From positions 25,478-89,477 of the forward strand of contig NIVC01003586.1 of NCBI GenBank assembly GCA_002269645.1: a stretch of 64,000 nt of DNA. Reading direction: 5' to 3'. This document shows positions 1 through 56,689 of this stretch, in pieces. Position 1 is the stretch's first letter. Each line of letters opens with the position of its first letter. A model generated the notes under the pieces. It had not been told where the DNA came from, made no database searches, and worked only from the letters and a program-made list of their open reading frames with translations. A program made the translations under genes and the position numbers. This stretch comes from Macrostomum lignano. Its lineage: Eukaryota.

Positions 1-386
1 TTATATTATATTAATTAGAAATGTTATTTAAATTTAGAAGTTAAGCCTAATTTTCAATTTTCATTGTATCTATAAAGTAGATCCATATGTAATTCCTAGA
101 ACATAGATAAATTTACTAAAAAAATAGTAACAAATTACTGCTACACCTATAATTAGGAAAAAGGCATATATGCTATAAATTTTTGGTGTAGGTCTATACT
201 CAAGAATAGTGATAGATCTATTCAATAGATAGTACGTAATACTAATACTAATACTAAAAAGTATAGTGCTTTTGAAGTGAAAAGAAGGATTATAAAGCAA
301 AATCAAATTGATTTTAAAGCAAAATCAAGAAACTGTTTTACCAATCGCTTAATTGTAACATCATAGTTGTTTTTCGGTTCGCCAAA

Positions 387-743
387 GTGGGTGACTTCGT
401 TGGCCAGTTAAAATTGCATGTCCCCCATGCTCTGCGTGCTGGTGTCGTCTATCAATTCAACTGCTCTCTTGACCAGAGCGTCTCCTACGTGGGGAAAACT
501 AAAAGACACCTACACACCAGAACCAGGGAGCACTGGCTCAAACCGTCTGCTATACAAGATCACTTACTGCATTGTAGTAGCTGCTCTAACTGCAACCCAA
601 ACGAGCACTTTAAAATCATTGACCAATGTCAGTCAGACTTCAAACTTAGAATTCTTGAGGCCATGCACATAAAAGCCCAGTCACCCAGCCTAAATACACA
701 ACTCCAACATAGTGGCATGGGTCACCTACTCCGTGTCTTTTGA
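387..743 (+). CDS. GIY-YIG endonuclease domain of the PLE ORF (partial; upstream RT missing)
   Basis: VVY-x-C, YVGKT, R-x-R-x-EH, late Glu (LEAMHI) and terminal Asn (PSLN) match GIY-YIG motifs. The GTG start is not a real start. Confidence 0.85.
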   Translation: MGDFVGQLKLHVPHALRAGVVYQFNCSLDQSVSYVGKTKRHLHTRTREHWLKPSAIQDHLLHCSSCSNCNPNEHFKIIDQCQSDFKLRILEAMHIKAQSPSLNTQLQHSGMGHLLRVF

Positions 744-6858: not shown

Positions 6859-8968
6859 TCAATCCAGGACTAGACTGACCAGCAGGCCGTAGTGATCAGA
6901 AGTGTGCATCTGCAGGCCTGGCGGCCTGTCCCGCCCGCACAGCTCGAACCTATCAACTGTCATGCCGCGCACTAGCAGGCGATCGGGCCGGTAACTGGAC
7001 CGCATCAAACGGCCAATACAGCGCCGGCCGCAACGCCGGCCAGCGTTCACATTTTTAGCTGCGTCCCACGTGTACTTTTCACCTTTGGGCCGGCCGCTGG
7101 CCTCCCACGCGTCCGAGACCGTATCGGGCAGGCCGCCCGCCGATTTCAGCTCGTCGCTGCACATTATATTGAAATCGCCGCCTGTTTGTTTTATTGAATC
7201 GGATGGTTTTGTTATAGCGGAATGGCGAACAGATTCTGATTTGAACATAATTAGAACATAAAGTTTATCAGCTAAGCTGGTCATTCATTTATTTTTGTCA
7301 TTTTATTATTATTGGGATTCTTCGGACTAATTAAGACTTTTATCAATCGTCAAAGTTAAGTACTCTGTAAACATTGAGTCTGCAAGAAGTCTACAGACAG
7401 AATCCTATTTACCTGAGATCTCAGCAATTCCACTCAAGCCTCGACACCTCAGCAATTCCCCCAAGCCTTGACATCTCAGCAATTCCACTCAAGCCTTGAC
7501 ATCTCAGCAATTCCACTCAAGCCTTGACATCTCAGCAATTCCACTCAAGCCTTGACATCTCAGCAATTCCACTCAAGCCTTGACATTTAAGCAATTCCAC
7601 TCAAGCCTCGACACCTCAGCAATTCCCCCAAGCCTTGACACCTCAGCAATTCCCCCAAGCCTTGACATCTCAGCAATTCCCCCAACCCTTGACATTATAG
7701 CAATTCCCTCTGTAAGCCTTGAAATTATTATAGCAATTCCCCCTGTAAGCCTTGACATTATAGCAACTCCCCCTGTAAGCCTTGACATTATAGCTATTCC
7801 CCCTGTAAGCCTTGACATTATTATAGCAATTCCCCCTGTAAGCCTTGACATTATTATAGCAATTCCCTCTGTAAGCCTTGACATTATTATAGCAATTCCC
7901 CCTGTAAGCCTTGACATTATAGCAACTCCCCCTGTAAGCCTTGACATTATAGCAATTTCCCCTGTAAGCCTTGACATTATAGCAATTTCCCCTGTAAGCC
8001 TTGACATTATAGCAATTTCCCCTGTAAGCCTTGACATTATAGCAATTTCCCCTGTAAGCCTTGACATTATAGCAATTCCCTCTGTAAGCCTTGACATTAT
8101 AGCAATTCCCCCTGTAAGCCTTGACATTATTATAGCAATTCCCCCTGTAAGCCTTGACATTATTATACCAATTCCCCCTGTAAGCCTTGACATTATTATA
8201 CCAATTCCCCCTGTAAGCCTTGACATTATTATACCAATTCCCCCTGTAAGCCTTGACATTAAAGCAATTCCCTCTGTGAGCCCTGACATTATTATAGCAA
8301 TTCCCCCTGTAAGCCTTGACATTATTATAGCAATTCCCCCTGTAAGCCTTGACATTATTATAGCAATTCCCCCTGTAAGCCTTGACATTATAGCAATTCC
8401 CCCTGTAAGCCTTGACATTATTATAGCAATTCCCCCTGTAAGCCTTCACATAGAAATACGTAGGCTATGCTGCTCTTAAAAAGTTTCTTAGAAATCGGAG
8501 AGAACTTTTGAATTGTTTGCGCTCACCAAGCAGGGAGCGGGTCGCGGCAGACGAGGTCATGGCGCGCAGACAGGTGACCAGCTGGGCGCGCCGTTCGGCA
8601 GTCTGAGAAGCGCCAGATTCCAAATGACAGTTGAACAGCCGGGCCTGCTTGTCGCCAAGCTGCACATTGCAGGCCAGCAGACAGCGGCCCATTTTAGAAT
8701 TGTCTAACGGCAGGACCCGACAGTCCAGGCACTGCACAGAATCTTTGATCAGGGTGGCCACAAAATAATGGTCTGTGTGACCGCCCGGCAGCAGGCGATA
8801 GTTGCTTAGCCGCTGAAGCAGCTGGTCAAAGCTGGCGGGCACGACCTCCTGAAGCAGGGCCACGTGAACATCGTGCGCCAGGATGCAGTTGGCCACAGAT
8901 TCTGTGCGCACTGCCAGCTGCTCCGAGTTGAGCCCCTCAGTGTTCCACAACAGCACGCGTAGTGTCAT
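6859..8968 (-). CDS. TDP2: Tyrosyl-DNA phosphodiesterase 2 (EEP family); exons 8968-8527 and 7181-6859, possibly with an unseen upstream exon
   Basis: LWNTEG, LLQEV, MGRCLL, CHLES, AERRAQL. Splicing GTGAG(8526) to AG(7182) rebuilds LLGGDFN. Exon 2 has GGLP..VSDAWE..G.P, YTWD, PDR, SDHYGL. Confidence 0.93.
7410..8446. repeat. Minisatellite, 27-33-bp unit (GCCTTGACAT[CTC/TAT]AGCAATTCCCC..), in the TDP2 intron
   Basis: Direct tandem units. A 27-28-bp subtype (7410-7690) grades into a 30/33-bp subtype. Confidence 0.95.
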
Positions 8969-10314
8969 CGCACCTGCGCCGGCTAAATTGAGTGATGACA
9001 AAACGTCTAGCAGAAGTTACAGTGCTCTACTATTTACACTTCAGTATGTATCCAAATAAATGCTTACCTATATTATCCATTGGCGTTTTCAAAATGCCAG
9101 AACCGAAAATTCCAAATCTGAAATGGTTTCAATTATAGCTTTTCTAATATGCAAATATGCTGCATAAAGCTGAAAAACCTGTGCACTGGTAGATCTTGAT
9201 TAGGCACAGATTGAGAAACTGTTTGATGGAGGCCAAGCTTAAACTAAACACAGCCCTTCAAAAATCAAATCCTTTCCAAAATTTGAAAAAAAACTTTAAA
9301 TCTGGCACTGTCTGTGATTGTCTGATATAACTGTCTAAATAAGTTATATAGCCAGTGCTACTATATAGGCTACATTTTAAATGTGGCTGTTTTGGGACAA
9401 TCCATATTTCTACATTTATACCATTTCTTTATCATTTATATAGACTTTGTATTGTATTGTATAAAAGCTAGTGCTAGTGTTTTGCATTTTTTATCTAAAA
9501 TTTAATTAAAAAATTCATTGAAAATAAATTTTGAGAAATACAATAGATTTTTAGAAAAATATAAATAAGCAAAAATAAATAGTGCTAGCAATTGTTTTGA
9601 CATGTTTTGTTTAAACTACTAAATTATGTGGCATTACCACATTGAAATAACAAAAAATTGTACTTTAAATATTAGCTGGCAAATAATGGATTAATGGTTC
9701 AACAATTATCTTTCTATTATATATAGTAGAGAATAAATATAGTAATGCAATATACTCTAATATAAATTTTAGCAAAATTAAAATTCAACTACATTTAGGC
9801 CTATAATCTTGTAGCTTCATTGTCTATAAAAAATTCAAAGTTATCCTTAGTAAAACTAAATGGCCCATAACTAGCAATGTAGCCTTTAGCTTAGCTGGCT
9901 TTAGAGCAATTGAAAATTATACAAAGAGGAAAGAATAAAGAAAAAGTGATAGTCATTTACCATTTAAAAACTTTTTCCAATAAGGCTAATCCATGCTAGA
10001 CGCTATCTGCAATAATGGCTATTGGCTGCAATAGGGCTATGGAACATGACAATATTCCTAGATAACTAGGTTATATCTCTATACAATGATTTGAACTATC
10101 AGTTAGCATAGACAATAGAAACTTAATTTGGTTAAGATTTTTATATGCACTACATAGTAGTATGTGCTCAATTCTTTTAGCATGTACCATTATTAGAATC
10201 ACTATGCTTTATAGTTGCATTAAAACATGATATATATACATATATGCACAATACCTAACTGACCTAGCTAGCTCGTAATCTTGCTATCTGACAAGGGGCC
10301 CAGACAATTGACAA

Positions 10315-10530: not shown

Positions 10531-10672
10531 ATATATTTCCAATTTCAAAATTTTACTTAGTTAATAATTATGACTTACTTACTTACTACTACTTACTACT
10601 GACGGGGGGCGCAGGCGCCGCGAATAGGCCGCGAGGCCCCTATCGCAACCCCAAGGTAAAAGAGCACAAGGA

Positions 10673-15552
<4,880 letters not shown>

Positions 15553-16839
15553 TTATCCCAGGATTGCTCCCAGGCGAGGCTCCGGCAGGCCCCCGGTCCA
15601 CACTCTGCAAGATCAGGGGGCGGGAGGCCGGCTGCGGGCTTGGGACACAGGCGCCAGGTCGAGTTGACAGCCGACGCCCGAGCCCTCCCCCACAAGAGCG
15701 GCCCTCGAGAACCCGTGTGGTACCAGTTGCAACTAAGGGCTGTCGATGGGTAGTTGGCGCTTAGCCAGCAGCCAACTACTTAGCAGCCACCTGCCCCGCA
15801 AAAAAGCAGCAGGGGGGATCCGTCCCCCACCAGCAGACCAAGACGAGGAAGCTAGCCGCTTCCACGCCAGGCCAGAACGAAAAGGAGGGGGAAGAGCCTC
15901 CTCGAAAAACGAAAAGCTGGCGGATGTCACAGAGTCCCTCGGTTTAAGTTGCCGTTTGCCCCCCATAATTATGACTTAGTTTTTTCCCCAAAAATTGCAT
16001 ATTACTTTGCTTGCCTCCAGTTGCAACTTAAGTTCATCTAGTTGCAACTTAGTTGCTTCTAGTTGTGATATAGTCTTTTTGTTTTTCTTTTCTTTTTTTG
16101 ATTTTTCTTCTTTCCTCTTCTTTTTTATTTTTTTCTACTTTTTTTCTTTCTTCCTCTCTTTTCGTCTATTTCCTCTATTCCTCTATTTCCTCTATAAGTG
16201 GACAAAAGGCATCCAACCTTCCATTGTAATTTTGTAACTTTTTGGTATTGCATTATAGTTTTGGATAAATGGCAAGAGTAACTAACTGTCTCATTAAGAC
16301 TAAATGACTAATCAGCTAATTAGTACTATACCTATATTACTATGTTAACATGTTCTATGTTGCATCTTTTAGATAGGCCTACTTAATTTTTAGCTTTAAT
16401 ATAATTTATAATATTATTTAGGTCAAATAGAAATAATTTTATATAATAAAATACTACATGGGAGAATAGCAATTTGTTATTTTTTATTAGTAAACAGTGC
16501 AATCTGTTTAAATAAACATTTATTGTTAGCATATTGTGACTATACTTCTTAGAACATGATTCACCTGTTCTTCACACTGTAGCCTATTTATTGTATATAT
16601 TCTTAATTTAAAGAAGTACACAAAAAAATAAATGCACAAAAATATATAAGCTTCTCTTGAAATGAACTGCAAATTTTATTTCTACAACTACAAGGTTCAA
16701 TCAAGCACACTACTCAAACAAACTTGCTGTCTGTGTCTAACCTTACCACACCCTACCCTACCCTCTTCCGCATAATACCATTGACCATAAATGCGCAACT
16801 GCTGGCCGATCTGGCCACCGTAAATTGTGGTGGACCAGG

Positions 16840-18817: not shown

Positions 18818-21153
18818 AAAAAGTACAAAATATAATTACTTTTATAAGATATCTTATAAGCCATGTCAGTGCTTAGCCTTAGGCCTTTAAATTTTGTGCT
18901 TAGATCTACCCTATAGTTAGGATAGTACAACATGGTATGCTAGAAAAATGCCTCTTTTTATGTTATAACAAATATATGCCACTTTTATATTGTTAAAAAT
19001 ATAAACAATAAAGGACCTTTTTTGCAGTTGTCAAATTTTTTAACAAGAAAAATATGACTAGGCTTAAAGAAAAGTTAAATAAACCCATTTGTGCGTGCAC
19101 TGCGCTTTAGAAAAATTTCAAAAGTCCATCCGCAGTTTTACAACTTTTTCCTATAGGAAAGAGGCTTGCAAGTTTATTCATTGAATTTCATTGCTCAGCT
19201 AATACATAGGGCTACATATTGAAAGGCGCCAATAATAAAACCTATTGAATCTCAACAGAGTCCTATCTATCTTTTCACACTACAACTGCTATGTACACTT
19301 TGCCCAAGCCCAACCCCCTGTTCCGAGGGAATCATTAAATTTAATTGCAGCCCCCAACACAGGGGGGTTATTTGCCTTGAACCTGGAACATGTGCACCCA
19401 CCCCCAATACATAGCAACTTGCAGGTGGAGGTTGGGATGGCTTTTTTTATAAACCAACTGCAACCCTTCCACTGGAAAGACAGAAGGGCCAAAGAAGGTT
19501 AAAAGCAGTTTTCTACTTTTTTAGGGATGTTAAAATGTAAAAATTAAAAATTAAAACAGCCTAAAGCCTGATCTGGAAAATTTGCAGTTTTCCCATAAGA
19601 TTCAATGCTGATTTGGCAGTATTGTAGGAGTTCACTTGCAACAGACAAACATTGAATCAGTTTTAGTATATTGAAGCTTAGAGCCTATATCTATAAAAAT
19701 ACTGCTTGTTTTGTTAATAAAAAGCTAAAAGAGTTCTTCAAAACTTTTATAATGCATGTATTTTTTAAAGAGAAAATTTCTTGCAATGTGTAACTTGTGT
19801 ATTTGTCAAACTTTTAAGTTTTAGTAAGCATAAATTAGTGTGCCAAAAATTTACTTGAGATCAAAATGGTAGGCCTATGCCAAAATAGCTAAACTATTCA
19901 TTACATTAGTATGCTAGATATTTTTGGCATGCATATAACTTTCAAAGTATGGGACTTGCCTTATAGTTTTTTGTTAAGCCTATAAGTATAGTTATGCTAA
20001 AAATCACTAGAAAAGACATTTTTATTTAAGATATATAAGTTTCTCTTTACAAAAAGAAAAAAAAACATTCTATTTAAAACAAGCTATAATAGTAGATCTA
20101 AGGTCCAATTTCAAAATAGGATTTAAAAAGTCAAGATGCTATAGTTTTCCTATTGTGCAGAAAATCCTAGACTAAAGGACTTATTGTTATTAAAAACATA
20201 TGCTGTGTTATAACACTATGTTGATTTAGATTTACCTTAATATATTGTCTATAAATATCTAAAAATATTCTAATAATAGAGATATGCCCAACCATTAAGC
20301 TATTAATTTTTTAACAAATTAGTTAAACTTCAACTTAAGTATAGGTAATAAATTATAATGAAAGCCTTTTGACAATTGCTTTAAACAATTATTTTAAACC
20401 AATAATTATCTAGTTCCAAATATCTAGCTCGTACTAATAAGCTTCAATCTTTGCAATGTCTATGACGTTGAAGTCTAGGCCATTATCTTATAGGACTAAT
20501 AGCTGATTATTATACTTGTGTTCAATTTTAAGAACTTGAAAAATTCTATATTATTGTCACCTTAAACTTAAAGAATTTGTCATATCTTTTGACTAAACTT
20601 GATAAAAATTAAGATTTTATTGTAATTTTGGGTGATTTGCAAAAAAGTTGCATGATCAGTGTGATTTTAAAGGTTGCAAATGTATGGTCATACTGCCTAC
20701 ATAACCATATGACAAGTGTTTCTAATTAATAATTGATATAATCCCTTATCAATCAAATTCAGTATTATTTCTTTTATAATTGGATGATTTGAGATTAAAA
20801 GCAATGAGATGGGATTGAAACTTTTATTAAGGTGGATAAAATGGTTAGATAGTAAGATAAAGAATGATTTAAATCAATTCATTAGATTTTAAGACTATAG
20901 ATAAGGAATCCTGAAATTACACAGGTCCTTTTAAGTCCCAAAAATTTTGACTATTGAGAGTATTGGCATTTTAAAGTCTTATCAACCATAATTTATTTAA
21001 AAATAGAATAATAGAAAAGTGTTGATTATTTTATTCACCATTACTTGTCATGACACACAGCTGCTGATACTACCAGAACTAAATGTTAAAACTTTCTGAA
21101 TAGCTGTTTAGTTGCTCCAATTGCAGTCGCCAACTCACGCAGACACGGACGCA

Positions 21154-21462
21154 ATGTCCTCAGATGTCGAGAACCGGCAGCCGACTGCTAAGCTGGCCGA
21201 GATTGGCGACATCTTCAGTCGGAAACTGCACAGCTTCAATCCGGACAACTACAATATCTATCATTTCGAGGAGCTGACCATATCCGGCCGGAAGTACCTG
21301 TTCCGGCCATCTGTGCGCAACGACATGCTGACTGTTGTGCTGAAATACCGCGACCGCATGTGCCTGCTTGTGTCCATGCCCTGCCCTAGTGGAGACCCGG
21401 CCGCTAGGATACACGAGATTCACCAGTATGTTATGCAGTCAGAGTCTGCGGCTGGTGTGTGA
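21154..21462 (+). CDS. Uncharacterised 102-aa protein, paralog 1 of an orphan ~82-aa domain
   Basis: GC-richer ORF in AT-rich flanks. Ungapped 38/82 identity (hand count) to the N-terminus of 23554-24660. Confidence 0.8.
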   Translation: MSSDVENRQPTAKLAEIGDIFSRKLHSFNPDNYNIYHFEELTISGRKYLFRPSVRNDMLTVVLKYRDRMCLLVSMPCPSGDPAARIHEIHQYVMQSESAAGV

Positions 21463-23553: not shown

Positions 23554-24660
23554 ATGGCAACGCCAGCCAAGCAGAGCAAGCTAAGCTTAGCGGAGCTGTT
23601 TTCTAAAAAGTTTCACTCCATCAACTTGAGCAACTTCAACATTTATCACTTTGAAGAGCACGCCATCGACGGTAGGAAATACCTGTACAGGCCGTCCGCT
23701 GACAACAGCCTGGTGCACATCGTGGCGCCGTTCCGCGAGGCCCACTGCTTCTTATCCTCGATGCCGTGCCAGCCAGATGATCCACTTGGCCAGGTGCGCT
23801 CGGTGCACCAATTCATTGTGCGATTGGAGAGCGGCGAGGTCAGCTTTGAGGAGACCAAATGCGGGGGCCTGGCTAAACTGGTTGATCCGGCTGCGACTGG
23901 CGCCAAATCTGCGCCGAAATCCACGGCGCCACCGGGTAAGGCGACGTCGGCGGCGGCAGCGAAACCGGCTACGTCAGCAGCGGCGGCGGCAACGAAGGCC
24001 GAGACGACGGCGGCAACAAATTCCAAGACAGCAAGCTCGGCAGCCGTTGCAGTGGAAGCAGAAGACGAGAAGAACAAGAAGAAACCGGCAGCGCCGGCCA
24101 AGGACAACAAAGACAAGGACGGCAGCAGCGCGAAGGCGGGAGATTCTAGCGAAACGGCTGCGGCAGCGCCAGCTGAAGCACCGGCCAAACCTGCGGACTC
24201 GGCGAAGCCACGCGACGAAAAAGTCGTCAAGGATAAGTCGCCGACTCCGCCGCCACAGTCGCAGCCGAAGGCCGCTGACGGAACCCAGGAGGAGAAGCAG
24301 GCGAAGGAAGAGACTGCGGCGTCAGCTTCCACTGCCGACAAGCCCGACGGTACCGCCGACAAGGAGGACAAGACTCCTCCCAGGGCCGGCAAGGATGCGG
24401 AGTCGCAGTCGGGCAGCGCCGAAGGCGACAGCAAAACCGCGGCTCCCACGACGGTGGCAGCCGAAGACAACGCTGAAGGTGACGAGCTGGCGGGCTCGAA
24501 TGCGACGGATTCAAAGCCGGAGGTTGCTGCAGCCGACGGCAAGGCCGAGGAGGACAAGTCGGCAACGGAGGCAGAGCCGGCGGCGGCCGCAGAATCGGCG
24601 CCTGCAGTTGCCGTTAGCAACGGCGGCGGTGGAAAAAGCGGCGGCGAAGACGCTTCCTAG
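23554..24660 (+). CDS. Uncharacterised 368-aa protein: orphan N-terminal domain plus long Ala/Lys/Glu/Asp-rich disordered tail (paralog 2)
   Basis: Long GC-rich ORF, ACAATGG start context, shared domain with 21154-21462. Confidence 0.85.
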   Translation: MATPAKQSKLSLAELFSKKFHSINLSNFNIYHFEEHAIDGRKYLYRPSADNSLVHIVAPFREAHCFLSSMPCQPDDPLGQVRSVHQFIVRLESGEVSFEETKCGGLAKLVDPAATGAKSAPKSTAPPGKATSAAAAKPATSAAAAATKAETTAATNSKTASSAAVAVEAEDEKNKKKPAAPAKDNKDKDGSSAKAGDSSETAAAAPAEAPAKPADSAKPRDEKVVKDKSPTPPPQSQPKAADGTQEEKQAKEETAASASTADKPDGTADKEDKTPPRAGKDAESQSGSAEGDSKTAAPTTVAAEDNAEGDELAGSNATDSKPEVAAADGKAEEDKSATEAEPAAAAESAPAVAVSNGGGGKSGGEDAS

Positions 24661-27894: not shown

Positions 27895-28917
27895 CTACAG
27901 CTTCTGGCTGGCCAGTGCACCGATGGCATTGCAACTGCAGCCGCCGCCGAAACTGCTGCAGCCGCCGCCCCGACACACTGCTGTCTCGTACAGCGAGGCG
28001 ATCTCGCACGGCCCCTCCTCCGCCGCCGCAGCCACCTCCCCGCCCAGATGCAGCGGCGCCGTGGCCGCCGTGCGCCGGTTCGCGAAAACCTGTCGAGCTG
28101 CCGACGACAGACCGGCGTTGCCGCCGCCGACGCCGCCGCCGCTGAGAAGATGCCGATGGTTCGTCGAAGTTCCGCTACCGCCGCCCGCCAGGGCCGCCGA
28201 CGCCGCCGCCGCAGTGCTAGCCGAGGATTCCGAAGATCTGATCGATCTGGACGACGACGCCCGCTGAGCGGCGATGATGATCAGGAGCACCACGATGACC
28301 AGCAGGCAGACTGCCAGGGCTGCCGTGGCCGCTGGCAGCCAGGCCTCTCGATGCCCGGCCGCCGCAGCCGCCGCAGCCGCCGCTGCTGCTGCCGCCGCTG
28401 CCGCCGCAGCCGATGCCGCCGAAGGCGTCGGAGTCGGGCTAGACGGCGGCGGCCATGTTGAAGTTGGCTGCGGAGGCCGCGGTCGGGAGCAGAGGGCGCC
28501 GCCCTGGTACTGCTGGCAGTCGGCGAACCCGATCAGCGCTGGCGGCTGGATCGTCAGGCACTCGTTCCTGGCCAGCCGCCAGTCCTCCGCCACCTCGCCG
28601 CTTCCGACGCCGCCCTCGCCCAGCTCCCAGCGGCAGCTGCACCGGCGCCTGTCCCTGACGCCGTCGATCCACAGCCGGCGGTCGACGCGCTCCTCGGCCA
28701 GCCGAGCGCCGGCCGCTGCGGCGCCCCCGTCCACGGCCGCCGCTGGAGCGAGCGCCAGGCCCTCTCTGGCGCACAGCTGGGCTGCCTCCGACCAGGGCAT
28801 CGCGCCGAGAATCACCCGGAGTCCCGGCAGTGGCTGTTGCGCGTCCGCCTGACATGACGCTATTGTTAGAACTGTTGCCATGGCAACTAGAAGCAAACCG
28901 GCAGCAATCTGCGACAT
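27895..28917 (-). CDS. Single-pass membrane protein with a C-type-lectin-like domain (340 aa, intronless)
   Basis: Signal peptide, MPWSEAAQLC, LWIDG, W-x-W, C..C..ALC four-Cys pattern, Pro/Thr stalk, poly-Ala, TM helix, cytoplasmic tail. Confidence 0.75.
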   Translation of the reverse strand: MSQIAAGLLLVAMATVLTIASCQADAQQPLPGLRVILGAMPWSEAAQLCAREGLALAPAAAVDGGAAAAGARLAEERVDRRLWIDGVRDRRRCSCRWELGEGGVGSGEVAEDWRLARNECLTIQPPALIGFADCQQYQGGALCSRPRPPQPTSTWPPPSSPTPTPSAASAAAAAAAAAAAAAAAAAAGHREAWLPAATAALAVCLLVIVVLLIIIAAQRASSSRSIRSSESSASTAAAASAALAGGGSGTSTNHRHLLSGGGVGGGNAGLSSAARQVFANRRTAATAPLHLGGEVAAAAEEGPCEIASLYETAVCRGGGCSSFGGGCSCNAIGALASQKL

Positions 28918-30590: not shown

Positions 30591-30929
30591 CTGGAGCTAT
30601 AAAAAGTTGAAGCATATTAACAAAGTATTTTTAAATAATGTTCGTAGTTTATTGTCGTTATGACAACCAAAGATCATTGTAAGGAAATTTCTGTATTTTA
30701 TAATAATTTAAGTTAAGATTAATGATTAATGACCAATAGAATTATTTTCAGGGAAGGGGAAATCTCAAGGAGTTAACCCGTGTTTTGGCCATAGACTATG
30801 CACTCACGGTGCAGCCCGATTGGCCATGGACATTCTCACAGAGGCTGAATTAATTAAATAACCGCCATAGACTATTGGCATTCGTGTTTCGGGATAAACC
30901 TCAGTTCACCGAGGGTCCAGATTCTCAGT

Positions 30930-31433
30930 TCACCACGGCCTAGCGTTAGGCGCTGACGGGTACGGAGGCTGCTGACAGCCTGGGGGAGGCGGCGGACAGG
31001 CACCGATCGGGTAGCCTCCTTGACCTTGGCCCGGCCTGTAGGGTCCCGGCGGCGGCGGCAGCGGCGGCGGCAGCGGCCCACAGTTTGGCGGCGGTGGCGG
31101 GCGGTGATGATGTTGGTGCTGGTGCGGCTCCGGAAAAGGAAAGGGTCCGTGATGATCATGGTGGTGCTGGTGCGGCTCCGGAAAAGGGAAGGGTCCGTGA
31201 TGATCATGGTGGTGCTGGTGCGGCTCCGGAAAAGGGAAGGGTCCGTGATGATCATGGTGGTGCTGGTGCGGCTCCGGAAAAGGGAAGGGTCCGTGATGAT
31301 CATGGTGGTGCTGGTGCGGCTCCGGAAAAGGGAAGGGTCCGTGATTGTGGTGCTGATGTCCCAGTGGAGGCGGCGGTGGTGGCAGATGCGGATGTCCGTG
31401 ATGACGGCCGTGGTGGTGATGGTGGTGATGATC
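30930..31433 (-). CDS. Terminal exon encoding a His/Pro-rich polypeptide (167 aa, five GPFPFPEPHQH units); absent from the ORF track because it has no ATG
   Basis: Acceptor CCAACAG| at 31434, then open frame DHHHHHHHGRHHGHPHLPPPPPPLGHQHHNH(GPFPFPEPHQHHHDHH)x4 GPFPFPEPHQHQHHHRPPPPPNCGP...PYPSAPNARPW* (504 nt). GC-rich block with sharp AT-rich edges. Confidence 0.7.
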   Translation of the reverse strand, partial: DHHHHHHHGRHHGHPHLPPPPPPLGHQHHNHGPFPFPEPHQHHHDHHGPFPFPEPHQHHHDHHGPFPFPEPHQHHHDHHGPFPFPEPHQHHHDHHGPFPFPEPHQHQHHHRPPPPPNCGPLPPPLPPPPGPYRPGQGQGGYPIGACPPPPPGCQQPPYPSAPNARPW

Positions 31434-31740
31434 CTGTTGGCAATGTTTATATAATTTATTTTTTATATTCTACTCGCATAAGTACTTAGTAGTAGTATAA
31501 GTTTTTTCCCTTTTTTCAAGACTTGCATATAGTCAACCTACGCTGATTGGTAAACTTAGATTTGCTTCAACTAATCCATTAACGATGAAGTAGACCTTTT
31601 GACTACTCTACTTTTCAACTGTCAGTAGTATCGTAAAGTTTCTTGATAATAAACTTTGACAGCATAGAAAAAAACAGCCTTTCATACTCCCTCCTCTCTT
31701 GTACAAATAGAACAGAAGACTTTAAATAGGTTAGGTTACT

Positions 31741-36913: not shown

Positions 36914-37840
36914 TCAGAAAAATGAAATTATATCAGCGAATTTATCCGGGCCCGTGGCTGCCACTGGATGTCCATGCGCTGGAGCGGCCGCGGCTGCAAG
37001 CGACACCGTGCGCAGCTGGCCGCAGGTGCACCGTCGCTTCTTCGGCACCCACCAGCTCGCCGACTCGCCCAGCAGCTGCTGCTGCTGCCGCGGCTCGCCC
37101 GCCTCTTCATCCTCGGAGTCGCTCGGCTCCGCAGCCGCACCGCAGCCGCCGCAGACGATGGCGCCGTCAGTTTGTCGTCGAATTAGCCAGCGAAGTTGCC
37201 GACGCTGCTGGCGCTTCTGCCGCTGGTGGCGAGAGGTCGATGGGAGCGGCGCCTCCTCGCTGCCTGGGCTGTCGGAGTCGGAGCCGCCCGATGCCGCCGA
37301 GTGGAGGCTGAGCAGTGGCGGCGGCCGCGGCGGCGGCAACAGCAGCGGCTCAGATTCGGCTCCGCTCCCCGCTGCCTCCTCGGCCACGTCGCTGCTCTCG
37401 TCGTCGTCATCATCGTCCTGCGGTCGCCAGTCGTCGTCAGCCAGCTGACGTTCCCGCCGAGGATGAACGCGCCGCCGATTCTGCTGACGCCAAATTCGCC
37501 GCAGAAGCAGGCGGCGCATCCGCCAGCGCAGGGCCGCCAGGGTGGCTGCGCAGGCCACGGCGCCCGCCACAGCGATGGCAGCGGCGGCTGCGGCGGCAGC
37601 GGCTGCAGCGGCGGCCGACTGACCTCCTCTGACCCTGTAGCGGCCGGGTGTCAGAGTCTCGTTCGCCAGGACGGCGGCGGCAGCGGCGGCGGCGTCGGTG
37701 GCAGCCGAATCCGCCAGCTCGGACCGGTTGCCGCTGCCGACAAGGCGAGCCGCTGCCGCGGCTTTCTCGCCGCCAGACGGTACCGCCTGCAGCGGCAGCA
37801 GCGGCAGCATCAACAGCGAAGCCAAGACAGCCGCTTGCAT
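36914..37840 (-). CDS. Orphan type I membrane protein (~308 aa from ATG 37840)
   Basis: Signal-like MQAAVLASLLMLPLLPLQA, N-glycosylation sequons NRS and NET, poly-Ala plus TM segment, basic stop-transfer RWRMRR, acidic/Pro-rich tail with CGGC and CTC. Confidence 0.6.
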   Translation of the reverse strand: MQAAVLASLLMLPLLPLQAVPSGGEKAAAAARLVGSGNRSELADSAATDAAAAAAAVLANETLTPGRYRVRGGQSAAAAAAAAAAAAAIAVAGAVACAATLAALRWRMRRLLLRRIWRQQNRRRVHPRRERQLADDDWRPQDDDDDDESSDVAEEAAGSGAESEPLLLPPPRPPPLLSLHSAASGGSDSDSPGSEEAPLPSTSRHQRQKRQQRRQLRWLIRRQTDGAIVCGGCGAAAEPSDSEDEEAGEPRQQQQLLGESASWWVPKKRRCTCGQLRTVSLAAAAAPAHGHPVAATGPDKFADIISFF

Positions 37841-40652: not shown

Positions 40653-43047
40653 TCAGCCCTCGCGCTTGACCGTGACCACAATATGGCTGAGGCATTTCCC
40701 CATGGCGTTGAAGCAGGGCTCCAGGAACACGGCCAGCAGGATCTCGAAGATGCGCCTCGTGTACCACAGCGAGATTTCATAGGCCTTGATGCTGGGCTGC
40801 CAGCACCAGATGGTGCAGAAGGACAGGCAGGCGAACTCGATGCCCCAGCAGATCGCGGCCGGTATGGCGCAGATCAAAGAGGTGATGCGGTAGCACCAGA
40901 GCTTCGTGGAGCTGAACACCTGGGGTGGCGAAGAAGAGGTTCGATAGTCAATGTCTGGTTTAGCAGTTGCTAAGTCTTGCACTGAGGGCTTCGTCAAGTC
41001 CGGCACTGTAGGCTTAGTCTCTTATAATGTCCTGCACTAAACGTGTCATCAAGTCCTGCACTAAACGTGTCATCAAGTCCTACCCTAAACCTGTCATCAA
41101 GTCCTGCACTAAATGTGTCATCAAGTCCTACCCTAAACCTGTCATCAAGTCCTTCAATTTTTGAACAGGTCCAGCGCTAACAAAGCTACCAATGCCCTGC
41201 ACTAAATTAGTTGCCTGGTAAGTCTTGTCTGCTCCAGGACCCTACAACAAAAATACTGATAATGATGCTGATCTTCTCACCTTGTAGCTGAGCACCCAGA
41301 CTCCATCAAAGCTGAACACAGTTGGGTCAGGCTCGGCGATTATGTCCTCAAATTTTACCTGTGAAAGATCGAATCGTGGGGGGAGATATTCGAAAAAGCT
41401 GCTACGAATTAATCTTTTTTCAAACCGATTTTCAAACAGCTACAACGGGATTCGAACCCCGGGAACCATCAGGCGCTACCTTCAAGTGTTGATTAATCTC
41501 TTTTGGATCGCGATCGGTCACGCTGAGGTCCTTCTCCTCCAGCTTGACTTCAACCTGTTCACCACCCACTGCGGCGGCCATTTCTAGTTCGCGTTAATCC
41601 CTTGATTAGACTGATACGTGAATTCAGAATGGGGATTTAGTCTGCTGGGAAAGCCTGGGTGAGGGGAATGACAGAAGCGAAAGCGGCGGAGCAGAGTTGA
41701 AAAATGCTCTGGGGACAAGCTTTACATAGCCGCAATGGCTGTGGGAATGGTGAGGGAGAGAGGGGAGGGGAGAGAATGGGGAATACATAGGATTGGCTCC
41801 CCTATGTAATAGCTGCTCCCCTGCCACTCGTTCTGTGCAAACACGATGCCAGCCCCTGAGGCGAGACTAAACAAAGCATTTTGGGGCAGCAAGGCCAAGG
41901 GCTACGCCCAGTGCACTGCTAGGGCACACGCCCCACCCTTGGCCATTGCTGCGTGTCTCAGACTTGGCTATGACCTCCCTCCACCTGCCAGAGAGTCGGA
42001 GACTCTCGCCAGAGGGGGGGGGGGTCAGTGTGCAAGTTGGGACGCAAACTGCTTGTCGGGCTGATCCGCTCGATACTTTTCCCCCATGCAGCAGATTAGT
42101 GTAGCTATTCATCCCCACCCCCTAGTTCACACACTGCAGTGAGTCTCAACTTTTTGAAAGCACTAACAGGCCACACTTGGGGGGGGGGCTTCAATCCAAT
42201 ACTCTTGCCTTCATACTTACTTGAGCGAAAGACTGAGCAAGAGTAGAGTATAGCTATAGGTAGAGCGACAGTGAGGCAGAGGCGGGAAGAGGAAGCGGGG
42301 GTGAGGCCATTGTGCATCGATTTGTTAGGGGGGGGGGGGCTTCATCCGCCGTTTCTTAATAATGCACTTCTCACCTACGAGTACGAACAAGAACGAGCGT
42401 ACAGAGGGGACTTAATAACTGAGACTAATGAGAAAGTGGGGTGGGGAGACGCACTGAATCTAGCTATACTCAAAACAACTTAATGCTTAAAAAACTCTAA
42501 TCCATCTGACAGCTGGATAACACTTGCATAATAAACTAACTAAGTTCCCAATTGTGGCACCAATTTATTTTGAGGAAATTAACCAACTTCATACTAGACA
42601 AAATCAGTTTGTCAATGATACTACTACTACTACTATATATTATCTACATAATAAACGATATTTTGCTCGCAAAATGTTATATATACTACTGTTGCTAGTA
42701 GGCTATTCAGGCATCGCCTCACTCACCCTACAGTGGCTGTTAAGTCCTTCTGGATCGCGAGACACAACGTCCAAATTGTCGGCTCGGAACTGCTCAAAGC
42801 GCACTCTGTTTCCGGCTACCTTGGGCACCGATGGCACCAGCCGCTTTGACCAAGGCTGCTGCTGCTGATGCGACTTGCCTTTGAAATTGAATCTGCTTGG
42901 CTGCTCCTGGGCAGAGTCCGGGCTATAGTCTTCCTCAGGCACGGCAAAGTGAGGATTGTTATGCAAACTATTGGTGTTTATATTAATATTGCTGCCCATA
43001 TTGTTAGGGTGGGTTCCGACACTGTTCATAGCAAAGTTGGTATGCAT
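40653..43047 (-). CDS. CAV: Caveolin; exons 43047-42727, 41358-41281, 40919-40653 (221 aa)
   Basis: Spliced product LDVVSRDPEGLNSHCR|VKFEDIIAEPDPTVFSFDGVWVLSYK|VFSSTKLWCYRITSLICAIPAAICWGIEFACLSFCTIW matches the caveolin signature (FEDxIAEP), scaffold and intramembrane domains. All introns GT-AG, phase 0. Confidence 0.95.
41025..41155. repeat. Minisatellite, 24-bp unit GTGTCATCAAGTCCTGCACTAAAC, in caveolin intron 2
   Basis: About 5 units. Confidence 0.85.
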
Positions 43048-44010: not shown

Positions 44011-56122
<12,112 letters not shown>

Positions 56123-56689
56123 GACTGCTACGGATGACCCCTCGCCTGGTTACTATCCATGGGCTCATGGGAATTTATAGTCATGCATTCCGCTGCCAGC
56201 TGATTGGCTCACGGCTGGCCAAATAACAGAATTTTTCATTCATTCCCCGCCACCTACTGCTGCCGTCTCCGAGCGCCGCGATCCAGCGCTGGCTCAGCAA
56301 CTGGGAGCAATGAAGCAATTGTAATTTCATTTTTCGTCCCGCCCACCAGCCAGCTTCCCAATCCACAGGCCGCTTCGTTACTCCTTGCTTCTTCTTCTTC
56401 TGCTCTGCAGTCTGAGCGAATCTCGGGTCGGCCGCTAATTCGCACAAGAAAATATCCCAAATGCTCATGTATAGAAGTATATGGGAATTATCTTTGCCCG
56501 GTAAATGCATGTAGGCTGGGAGGCAGCGAAAGTTGGGGGCCGATTATTTTGTCTGGAAAGTCTGGTAGGGGGGAAGGGGGCTGGCATCAATGCCGAAAAA
56601 TTGGAGCCTTAAAGTAAGCAAAGTACAGTAAGGAAAGTACAGCATGTACGCATGAGTAGTTAGGGTTGGCTCAAGCTGTATCTGACCCG

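What the first reader, a model, noticed from the sequence alone, without database searches (positions are those of the whole stretch)
30930..31460. Hidden ATG-less His/Pro-rich exon that a spliced-leader AUG would open exactly in frame
Seen: a 504-nt frame missed by the ORF track begins at the first base after CCAACAG| (phase 0). It encodes 167 aa, about one quarter His (44 by hand count) and about one third Pro, with 48-bp coding repeats and a Cys/Gly/Pro/Tyr tail. Upstream DNA is AT-rich and I found no convincing upstream coding exon. The A-rich acceptor resembles the TDP2 acceptor reconstructed above. Known: flatworm SL RNA ends in AUG that can act as initiator Met, and His-rich repeats bind Zn/Cu/Ni/heme or harden biomaterials. 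Inference: SL-initiated MDHHHHHHH... metal-binding or structural protein with repeat-number variation.
Basis: partly seen in the sequence, partly recalled or inferred. Interest (0 to 1): 0.7.

Follow-up and report, generated by a model that had tools for sequence, protein, structure and literature searches.

The report
Unannotated His/Pro-rich exon lacking ATG
A GC-rich island in the flatworm Macrostomum lignano probably encodes an unannotated 167-residue protein rich in histidine and proline that has no start codon of its own, so it must get one by splicing, but no transcript data could be reached to show how.

Summary
On the minus strand, 31433..30933 plus TGA at 30932-30930 is a 167-codon frame with 44 His and 53 Pro. 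It has no ATG, GTG or TTG, contains five 48-bp repeats, and starts right after CCAACAG.

The window is Macrostomum lignano contig NIVC01003586.1. This species' spliced leader (SL) ends in ATG.

Openness alone is weak evidence. Four of six frames are open here, and the window holds about 27 tandem arrays.

Evidence for coding:
- GC jumps from 0.26 to 0.66 at the acceptor and falls to 0.38 after the stop, as in confirmed exons of the window.
- A partial paralogue (NIVC01000606.1) keeps the stop, has an in-frame 18-nt insertion and shows 4 synonymous to 2 nonsynonymous changes in this frame only. Out-of-frame indels begin just after the stop.

Evidence against:
- The NCBI record has no gene model here.
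- 1.84 billion representative proteins gave no homologue.
- No transcript data could be reached.

SL-AUG initiation is possible but untested. Phase 0 is a weak coincidence, and a tiny upstream cis exon is at least as likely.

My estimates:
- coding exon, about 0.68
- SL start, about 0.25
- cis start, about 0.40

Function (metal-binding or structural disordered protein) is inferred from composition only.

The parts
30933..31433 (-). Stop-free His/Pro frame of 167 codons. Putative terminal, and possibly only, large coding exon.
   Evidence: Translation and counts. GC is 0.655 against 0.26 upstream and 0.38 downstream. Against the paralogue, 4 synonymous and 2 nonsynonymous changes in this frame only.
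30930..30932 (-). TGA stop codon.
   Evidence: It is conserved in paralogue L002. Directly after it the alignment breaks down, with a 5-nt indel.
31434..31440 (-). ccaacAG, the putative 3' splice acceptor (cis or SL trans). The exon starts at 31433 in phase 0.
   Evidence: Sequence. It resembles the confirmed TDP2 acceptor aaacaaacag|G. It fits the published trans motif [T/C]TNCAG only in part.
31470..31472 (-). In-frame TAG that closes the frame upstream. Its AG is a second possible phase-0 acceptor and would add NIKNKLYKHCQQ.
31346..31433 (-). N-terminal unique part, DHHHHHHHGRHHGHPHLPPPPPPLGHQHH.., written with mixed CAT/CAC and CCA/CCG/CCT codons.
31105..31345 (-). 48-bp tandem repeat, 5 copies at 98% identity. 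Each unit is 16 codons, GPFPFPEPHQHHHDHH.
   Evidence: TRF. Translation.
30933..31104 (-). C-terminal Pro/Gly/Cys/Tyr tail (RPPPPPNCGPLPPPLPPPPGPYRPGQGQGGYPIGACPPPPPGCQQPPYPSAPNARPW). GC 0.756.
   Evidence: L002 carries an in-frame 18-nt (PPPPPP) insertion here.
30648..30653 (-). AATAAA, a candidate polyadenylation signal about 280 nt after the stop and just before the 30-bp minisatellite.
   Evidence: It is present in L002 too. Its role is inferred.
31445..31452 (-). TATATAAA, 12-19 nt upstream of the acceptor. Probably chance in AT-rich DNA. It is the basis of one rival reading.
   Evidence: Sequence. Not tested.

Best explanation
Minus strand 31433..30930 is a real but unannotated, lineage-restricted coding exon of Macrostomum lignano.

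Shown:
- It encodes a 167-residue, low-complexity protein that is probably disordered. The protein has a His run, five GPFPFPEPHQHHHDHH repeats and a Pro/Gly/Cys/Tyr tail, and it ends at a conserved TGA.
- The exon has no start codon of its own.
- The frame is closed 12 codons upstream.

Inferred:
- The AUG is brought in by splicing at the CAG|G acceptor at 31434.
- There are two possible routes, and I cannot separate them. One is the SL, whose last three bases are AUG, giving MDHHHHHHH... (my estimate about 0.25 overall). The other is a very short ATG-bearing cis exon upstream (about 0.40 overall).
- From composition only, the product would bind divalent metals or protons through its 44 His, and would act as a metal buffer or a self-associating structural or condensate protein. 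The poly-Pro stretches could serve as docking sites.
For: - Organism and SL.
- Frame and lack of any start codon.
- Codon position 1 is 68% C, while position 3 is nearly even.
- GC rises from 0.26 to 0.62-0.66 at the acceptor and drops to 0.38 just after the stop. This is the same contrast as TDP2 exons (0.60-0.62) against the TDP2 intron (0.33).
- In the paralogue L002, 267 nt align. There are 4 synonymous and 2 nonsynonymous changes (pN/pS 0.16; P(>=4 of 6 synonymous) = 0.035). The other open frames have 0-1 synonymous changes. The only other frame with a 4:2 split has 21 stops.
- The one indel in the CDS is 18 nt and in frame. The indels after the stop are 5 nt and 2 nt. The stop codon and the AATAAA are conserved.
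- The acceptor resembles a confirmed A-rich acceptor in the same window.
Against: - No gene is called here in the GenBank record, in either copy.
- phmmer against 1.84 billion representative proteins gave only spurious periodic hits. Pfam and PDB gave nothing.
- No transcript evidence could be reached.
- Only six substitutions carry the selection test.
- CDS divergence of 2.2% is no lower than the general 0.7-2.4% between these contigs. The contrast with the 8.8% 3' flank may therefore reflect an unusually variable flank.
- Degenerate (CAC)n/(CCG)n triplet repeats and a 48-bp minisatellite could mimic 3-periodicity.
- The codon-usage test was inconclusive.
Confidence: 0.68

Rival explanations
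1. Sub-version A. The gene is SL trans-spliced at 31434. The SL's terminal AUG is the initiator and gives MDHHHHHHH..., so the protein exists only after trans-splicing.
For: - The M. lignano SL ends in ATG, and 30% of genes are trans-spliced.
- SL-AUG initiation is documented in flatworms.
- The acceptor is in phase 0 and the frame has no ATG.
- No upstream exon encodes a sizeable or signal-peptide-like peptide in phase 0 within 5.5 kb.
Against: - Phase 0 is a 1-in-3 coincidence. The TAG at 31470 and all in-frame CAG codons share it.
- CAACAG lacks the T at position -5 of [T/C]TNCAG.
- Trans-spliced genes in this species are mostly conserved genes, and this one is an orphan.
- Genes that need the SL AUG are a small minority of trans-spliced genes.
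- No reads were available.
Confidence: 0.25
2. Sub-version B. This is the terminal exon of a cis-spliced gene whose ATG lies in a tiny upstream exon. Candidates are ATGTCCTGGGGA|GTAAGT at 32701-32690 (MSWG) and MPRRRVSVVTW|GTGAGAGG at 34151-34119.
For: - Both candidates are in phase 0 and have consensus GT[G/A]AG donors.
- The acceptor is like the cis acceptor of TDP2.
- Cis introns containing repeats are normal here, as the TDP2 intron holds a 1-kb minisatellite.
- By prior, cis splicing is much more common than dependence on the SL AUG.
Against: - Candidates of this size are expected by chance in 5.5 kb.
- None looks like coding sequence or a signal peptide.
- The upstream DNA is AT-rich, with a degenerate ~480-bp duplication.
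- The upstream gene at 36914-37840 has no good phase-0 donor.
Confidence: 0.4
3. The region is not translated. It is a GC-rich island of degenerate triplet repeats, (CAC)n and (CCG)n, plus a 48-bp minisatellite, or the relic exon of a dead gene. The frame stays open only because the strand is T-poor.
For: - Four of six frames are open.
- The window has about 27 tandem arrays, half of them with periods divisible by 3.
- There is no gene model, no homologue and no start codon.
- The selection signal rests on six substitutions.
Against: - The GC island ends exactly at the acceptor and at the stop of this one frame.
- The 4:2 synonymous excess appears only in this frame.
- The indel inside the frame is in frame, while the indels outside are not.
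- His and Pro runs are written with mixed synonymous codons.
Confidence: 0.27
4. An unspliced transcript starts downstream of TATATAAA (31452-31445) and is translated from its first AUG at 31303 in the +1 frame. That is the 143-aa ORF 30872..31303, MIITDPSLFRSRTSTT....
For: - This ORF has an ATG and is open.
- The TATA-like motif lies about 30 nt upstream of the His run.
Against: - All six paralogue substitutions are nonsynonymous in this frame.
- The frame runs past the GC island into the diverged 3' flank, which carries a 5-nt indel in the paralogue.
- No gene with this product is on record.
Confidence: 0.04

Closest known systems
Flatworm mRNAs that take their initiator Met from the 3'-terminal AUG of the spliced leader (Cheng et al. 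2006 J Biol Chem; called 'slORFs' in PMC9851317)
   Same: The host is a flatworm whose SL ends in AUG. The ORF has no AUG of its own. An AG acceptor sits in phase 0 directly before the first codon.
   Different: There the SL junction was seen in cDNAs. Here no transcript was examined, and a cis junction is at least as likely. The published M. lignano trans-acceptor motif is only partly matched.
His/Pro-rich region of vertebrate histidine-rich glycoprotein (GHHPH tandem repeats flanked by Pro-rich regions). Recalled from my own knowledge, not tested here.
   Same: Tandem His- and Pro-rich repeats are flanked by poly-Pro stretches. The expected chemistry is Zn/Cu/Ni/haem and pH-dependent binding.
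   Different: No sequence homology. No signal peptide or cystatin domains are visible. The repeat unit is 16 residues and contains Phe.
His-rich storage or structural proteins: H. pylori Hpn, Plasmodium HRP2, Nereis jaw Nvjp-1, squid-beak His-rich proteins. Own knowledge; analogy only.
   Same: More than 25% His in a low-complexity, repeat-built protein.
   Different: These are unrelated sequences. Most are secreted or Gly/Ala-rich. Here one third of the residues are Pro, and localisation is unknown.
Non-coding minisatellites of the M. lignano genome (this window holds about 27 arrays)
   Same: Tandem unit at 98% identity with a period divisible by 3. Several frames are open.
   Different: Only 240 of the 501 nt are array. 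The unique flanks share the same frame, and the GC island, stop codon and paralogue substitutions follow that frame.

Membership tests
SL-AUG-initiated ORF (flatworm slORF) | The organism has an SL whose last three bases are AUG. | tested here: met
   The window is M. lignano NIVC01003586.1. The SL is CGGTCTCTTACTGCGAAGACTCAATTTATTGCATG (PMC8629364).
SL-AUG-initiated ORF (flatworm slORF) | The ORF lacks its own AUG and is in frame with an AUG placed directly before the first exon base. | tested here: met
   The frame has no ATG, GTG or TTG. The acceptor is in phase 0, a 1-in-3 coincidence.
SL-AUG-initiated ORF (flatworm slORF) | SL-bearing transcripts are joined at that acceptor. | not testable with these tools
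   No M. lignano RNA data were reachable. Look-ups for M+exon and for the alternative-frame ORFs found nothing on record.
SL-AUG-initiated ORF (flatworm slORF) | The acceptor matches the species' trans-splice motif [T/C]TNCAG. | tested here: inconclusive
   CAACAG has the CAG and the C at -6 but A instead of T at -5. The motif was found in only 9,551 of 21,754 trans-splice sites.
Protein-coding exon | Open frame longer than composition predicts. | tested here: not met
   Four of six frames are stop-free across the region, because one strand is T-poor and the other A-poor.
Protein-coding exon | Frame-specific purifying selection between copies. | tested here: met
   Synonymous to nonsynonymous changes are 4:2, pN/pS 0.16, P = 0.035, and only in this open frame. 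There is an in-frame 18-nt indel and a conserved stop. Power is weak, with six substitutions and one partial paralogue.
Protein-coding exon | Exon-like composition with boundaries at the splice site and the stop codon. | tested here: met
   GC goes 0.26 | 0.655 | 0.38. This matches the exon/intron contrast of TDP2 and caveolin.
Protein-coding exon | A gene model, a homologue or a domain. | tested here: not met
   No called gene. No homologue among 1.84 billion representatives. No Pfam or PDB match.
Metal-binding His-rich protein | Demonstrated metal binding, or homology to a protein with it. | not testable with these tools
   Only the composition is known: 26% His, with HHHHHHH and HQHHHDHH motifs.

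The most novel reading that the evidence does not exclude
An orphan, Macrostomum-specific gene whose whole coding sequence is one ATG-less exon. Under this reading it can be translated only after SL trans-splicing supplies the AUG. It would yield a signal-peptide-less His/Pro-rich disordered protein with a 16-residue repeat array that can expand. Such a protein might be an intracellular metal buffer or a self-assembling structural protein.
Probability: 0.2. Interest if true: 0.5.

Novelty: new member of a known kind. Interest (0 to 1): 0.3.

Why it matters
If confirmed, this would be a concrete case in the model flatworm M. lignano of a gene that standard ORF and gene callers cannot see, because its start codon is not in the genome next to it. 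That would argue for re-scanning trans-splice acceptors for ATG-less frames.

It would also add a new His/Pro-rich repeat protein that could be tested for metal binding or material properties.

The mechanism itself, SL AUG as initiator, has been known since 2006, and His-rich low-complexity proteins are common. The gain is therefore an annotation and a candidate, not a new principle.

Tried and rejected
1. The search for homologous proteins with the whole exon returned 8000 word candidates and nothing significant. It was probably saturated by HHHHH/PPPPP words.
2. The exhaustive phmmer search of representatives then gave only six spurious periodic-repeat hits.
3. Exact-product look-ups found nothing on record. 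I tried M+exon, the +1-frame ORF, a plus-strand ORF and the upstream 308-aa ORF.
4. Two further homology searches aimed to fetch paralogues of the 368-aa neighbour, so as to reach the rest of the paralogous exon. Both returned nothing. These M. lignano proteins are evidently not in that database.
I did not pursue it by other means.
6. Locus L003 stops about 300 bp short of the exon, and L002 stops inside the repeat array. The 5' half, the acceptor and the repeat number could therefore not be compared.
7. The codon-usage test against six window genes was inconclusive, because the repeated unit dominates it.
8. Rfam found nothing in the window.
9. I rejected an assembly frameshift as the reason for the missing ATG. 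The nearest upstream ATG frames are closed by stops (TAA at 31464-31462, TAG at 31472-31470), which leaves only a 5-nt non-homopolymer gap.
10. I rejected splicing from the upstream 36914-37840 ORF, which has no GT[AG]AG donor in phase 0.
11. I considered the short ORF MQVLKKGKKLILLLSTYASRI (31527-31462) as a signal-peptide exon. Its possible donors are in phase 1 or poor, so I rejected it.

Full report
**What is there**

Read on the minus strand, window 31433..30933 translates without a stop into 167 residues and is followed by TGA at 30932-30930. The product is DHHHHHHHGRHHGHPHLPPPPPPLGHQHHNH, then five copies of GPFPFPEPHQHHHDHH (the last one variant), then RPPPPPNCGPLPPPLPPPPGPYRPGQGQGGYPIGACPPPPPGCQQPPYPSAPNARPW.

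The counts are 44 His, 53 Pro, 16 Gly, 3 Cys and 3 Tyr. The frame contains no ATG, GTG or TTG, which explains its absence from the mechanical ORF list. It is closed 12 codons upstream by TAG at 31472-31470. TRF reports a 48-bp unit in 5.0 copies at 98% identity, 31105-31345. The first codon follows ccaacAG.

**Where it comes from**

An exact-product look-up of a neighbouring ORF places the window on Macrostomum lignano assembly GCA_002269645.1, contig NIVC01003586.1. Record position equals window position plus 25477, and the window runs to the end of the contig.

M. lignano has one 35-nt spliced leader (SL) that ends in ...TTGCATG. About 30% of its genes are trans-spliced, and the enriched trans-acceptor motif is [T/C]TNCAG (PMC8629364). 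Flatworm SLs end in AUG almost without exception, and this AUG can serve as initiator (Cheng et al. 2006, as cited in PMC9851317 and PMC12582326).

**Is the open frame more than chance?**

Not by itself. The minus strand of the region is 44% C and 15% T. A second minus frame (30875-31462) and two plus frames are also stop-free across it. The window carries about 27 tandem arrays, roughly half with periods divisible by 3, and many of them produce long open frames. The flanks of the 48-bp array could be read as degenerate (CAC)n and (CCG)n triplet repeats.

**Evidence that this particular frame is coding**

(a) Composition. Codon position 1 is 68% C, while position 3 is nearly even. His and Pro runs are written with mixed CAT/CAC and CCA/CCG/CCT/CCC codons.

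(b) Boundaries. GC is 0.26 in the 100 nt before the acceptor, 0.62-0.76 inside the frame, and 0.38 right after the stop. Confirmed genes of the window show the same contrast: TDP2 exons are 0.60-0.62 and the TDP2 intron is 0.33.

(c) Paralogue. The same assembly holds paralogous contigs, reached through an identical 104-aa neighbour protein. Locus L002 (NIVC01000606.1) covers the 3' flank, the stop, the C-terminal tail and about two repeat units.
- Over 267 aligned coding bases there are six substitutions. Four are synonymous in the His/Pro frame (CAC/CAT twice, TTT/TTC, AGG/AGA) and two are not (H to Q, P to L).
- This gives pN/pS of 0.16, and the probability of at least 4 of 6 being synonymous is 0.035.
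- In the other two minus frames and in two of the plus frames, 0-1 of the changes are synonymous.
- The only other frame with a 4:2 split has 21 stops.
- The single indel inside the frame is 18 nt (PPPPPP).
- The TGA is conserved, and the alignment collapses immediately after it with a 5-nt indel, followed later by a 2-nt indel.

(d) Polyadenylation signal. An AATAAA lies about 280 nt after the stop in both copies.

**Evidence against, and limits**

- The GenBank record has no gene called here in either copy.
- An exhaustive phmmer search of 1.84 billion representative proteins gave only six spurious hits to unrelated periodic proteins. Pfam and PDB gave nothing.
- The selection test rests on six substitutions.
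- The 2.2% divergence of the CDS is no lower than the 0.7-2.4% seen elsewhere between these contigs. The contrast with the 8.8% 3' flank (Fisher p = 0.001) may therefore reflect a variable flank rather than a conserved CDS.
- A codon-usage test was inconclusive.
- No transcript data could be reached.
- I put the probability that this is a translated exon at about 0.68.

**Where does the AUG come from?**

The frame must be entered between the TAG at 31470 and the first His codons. The only AGs in that interval are the CAG at 31436-31434 and the TAG itself. CAG|G is the better site, and it resembles the confirmed A-rich TDP2 acceptor caataaaacaaacag|G.

With the SL, the product would be MDHHHHHHH.... 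'Exactly in frame' is weak evidence, however:
- It is a 1-in-3 coincidence.
- The TAG is also in phase 0.
- Every in-frame CAG codon is a phase-0 AG.
- CAACAG lacks the T at -5 of the published motif.
- Trans-spliced genes in this species are mostly conserved genes, whereas this one is an orphan.

I scanned 5.5 kb upstream for ATG-initiated phase-0 exons with plausible donors. Only short candidates turned up, such as ATGTCCTGGGGA|GTAAGT (32701-32690) and MPRRRVSVVTW|GTGAGAGG (34151-34119). That number is expected by chance, so these candidates can be neither confirmed nor excluded. The upstream ORF at 36914-37840 has no good phase-0 donor. The upstream DNA is AT-rich and contains a degenerate ~480-bp duplication. 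An assembly frameshift hiding an ATG is unlikely.

I weighed priors (SL-AUG-dependent genes are rare and cis introns are common) against the phase and the lack of a convincing upstream exon. The result is about 0.25 for the SL start and about 0.40 for a cis mini-exon.

A further rival is an unspliced transcript translated in the +1 frame from ATG 31303. The substitution pattern (0 of 6 synonymous) and the indel in the paralogue speak against it.

**Function**

Nothing beyond composition is available. With 26% His in HHHHHHH and HQHHHDHH motifs, Zn/Ni/Cu/haem binding or pH-dependent self-association is plausible. The poly-Pro stretches could serve as docking sites. If the start is the SL AUG there is no signal peptide, and the protein would be intracellular. 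All of this is inference.

**Comparison and novelty**

His-rich repeat proteins are known from many lineages, and none is homologous to this one. At best this is a new, unannotated member of known kinds. Its main value is as an annotation lesson and a candidate for a simple RNA-seq check.

Noticed in passing
window 10577-15965 (-): A ~5.4-kb non-LTR retrotransposon. It has an ORF with endonuclease, RVT_1 and RNase H domains (10676-14506) and an upstream ORF (14494-15552). It is an insertion private to this contig: both paralogous contigs, L002 and L003, lack it, and the flanks rejoin within about 13 nt.
   Followed up: partly
window 6862-9016 (-): A TDP2-like Exo_endo_phos gene with two exons. 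Its intron carries a ~1-kb 30/33-bp minisatellite (7414-8452). It is called as a 275-aa gene on the paralogous contigs but not on the window contig.
   Followed up: partly
window 40653-41580 (-), alternative first exon 43046-42727: A three-exon caveolin gene (PF01146, E = 3e-23). Two alternative first exons both encode an ..RDP..LN.. segment. A 24/48-bp minisatellite sits in the last intron.
   Followed up: partly
window 27895-28917 (-) and 36914-37840 (-): Two single-exon ORFs flank the His/Pro exon on the same strand. Both show a signal peptide, a poly-Ala stretch, a transmembrane segment and a charged tail. Neither is called in the GenBank record and neither has a Pfam match. The downstream one has a pyrimidine-rich cccccccccag acceptor about 57 nt before its ATG, and its repeat-adjusted distance from the His/Pro gene is about 1.1 kb, which is borderline for an operon.
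   Followed up: no
window 21148-21462 (+) and 23554-24660 (+): Tandem paralogues share an N-terminal domain (..NIYHFEE..GRKYL[FY]RPS..) with no Pfam match. The 104-aa protein is identical on three contigs of the assembly. The longer one varies between copies (368, 372 and 385 aa).
   Followed up: no
window 44995-46017 (-) and 55706-56149 (-): Rhodopsin-type GPCR exon(s) (7tm_1, E = 1e-8). A possible first exon lies 10 kb upstream, separated by many minisatellites. An (AGT)179 microsatellite at 44389-44925 abuts the gene.
   Followed up: no
window 318-740 (+): This ORF fragment has a GIY-YIG-like motif (VVYQFNC...YVGKTKRHLHTRTREH), which recalls the endonuclease of Penelope-like retroelements. 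Pfam gave no hit at E <= 0.001.
   Followed up: partly
whole window: About 27 tandem arrays occupy a large share of the 64 kb, and roughly half have periods divisible by 3. They generate dozens of long spurious ORFs on both strands.
   Followed up: partly
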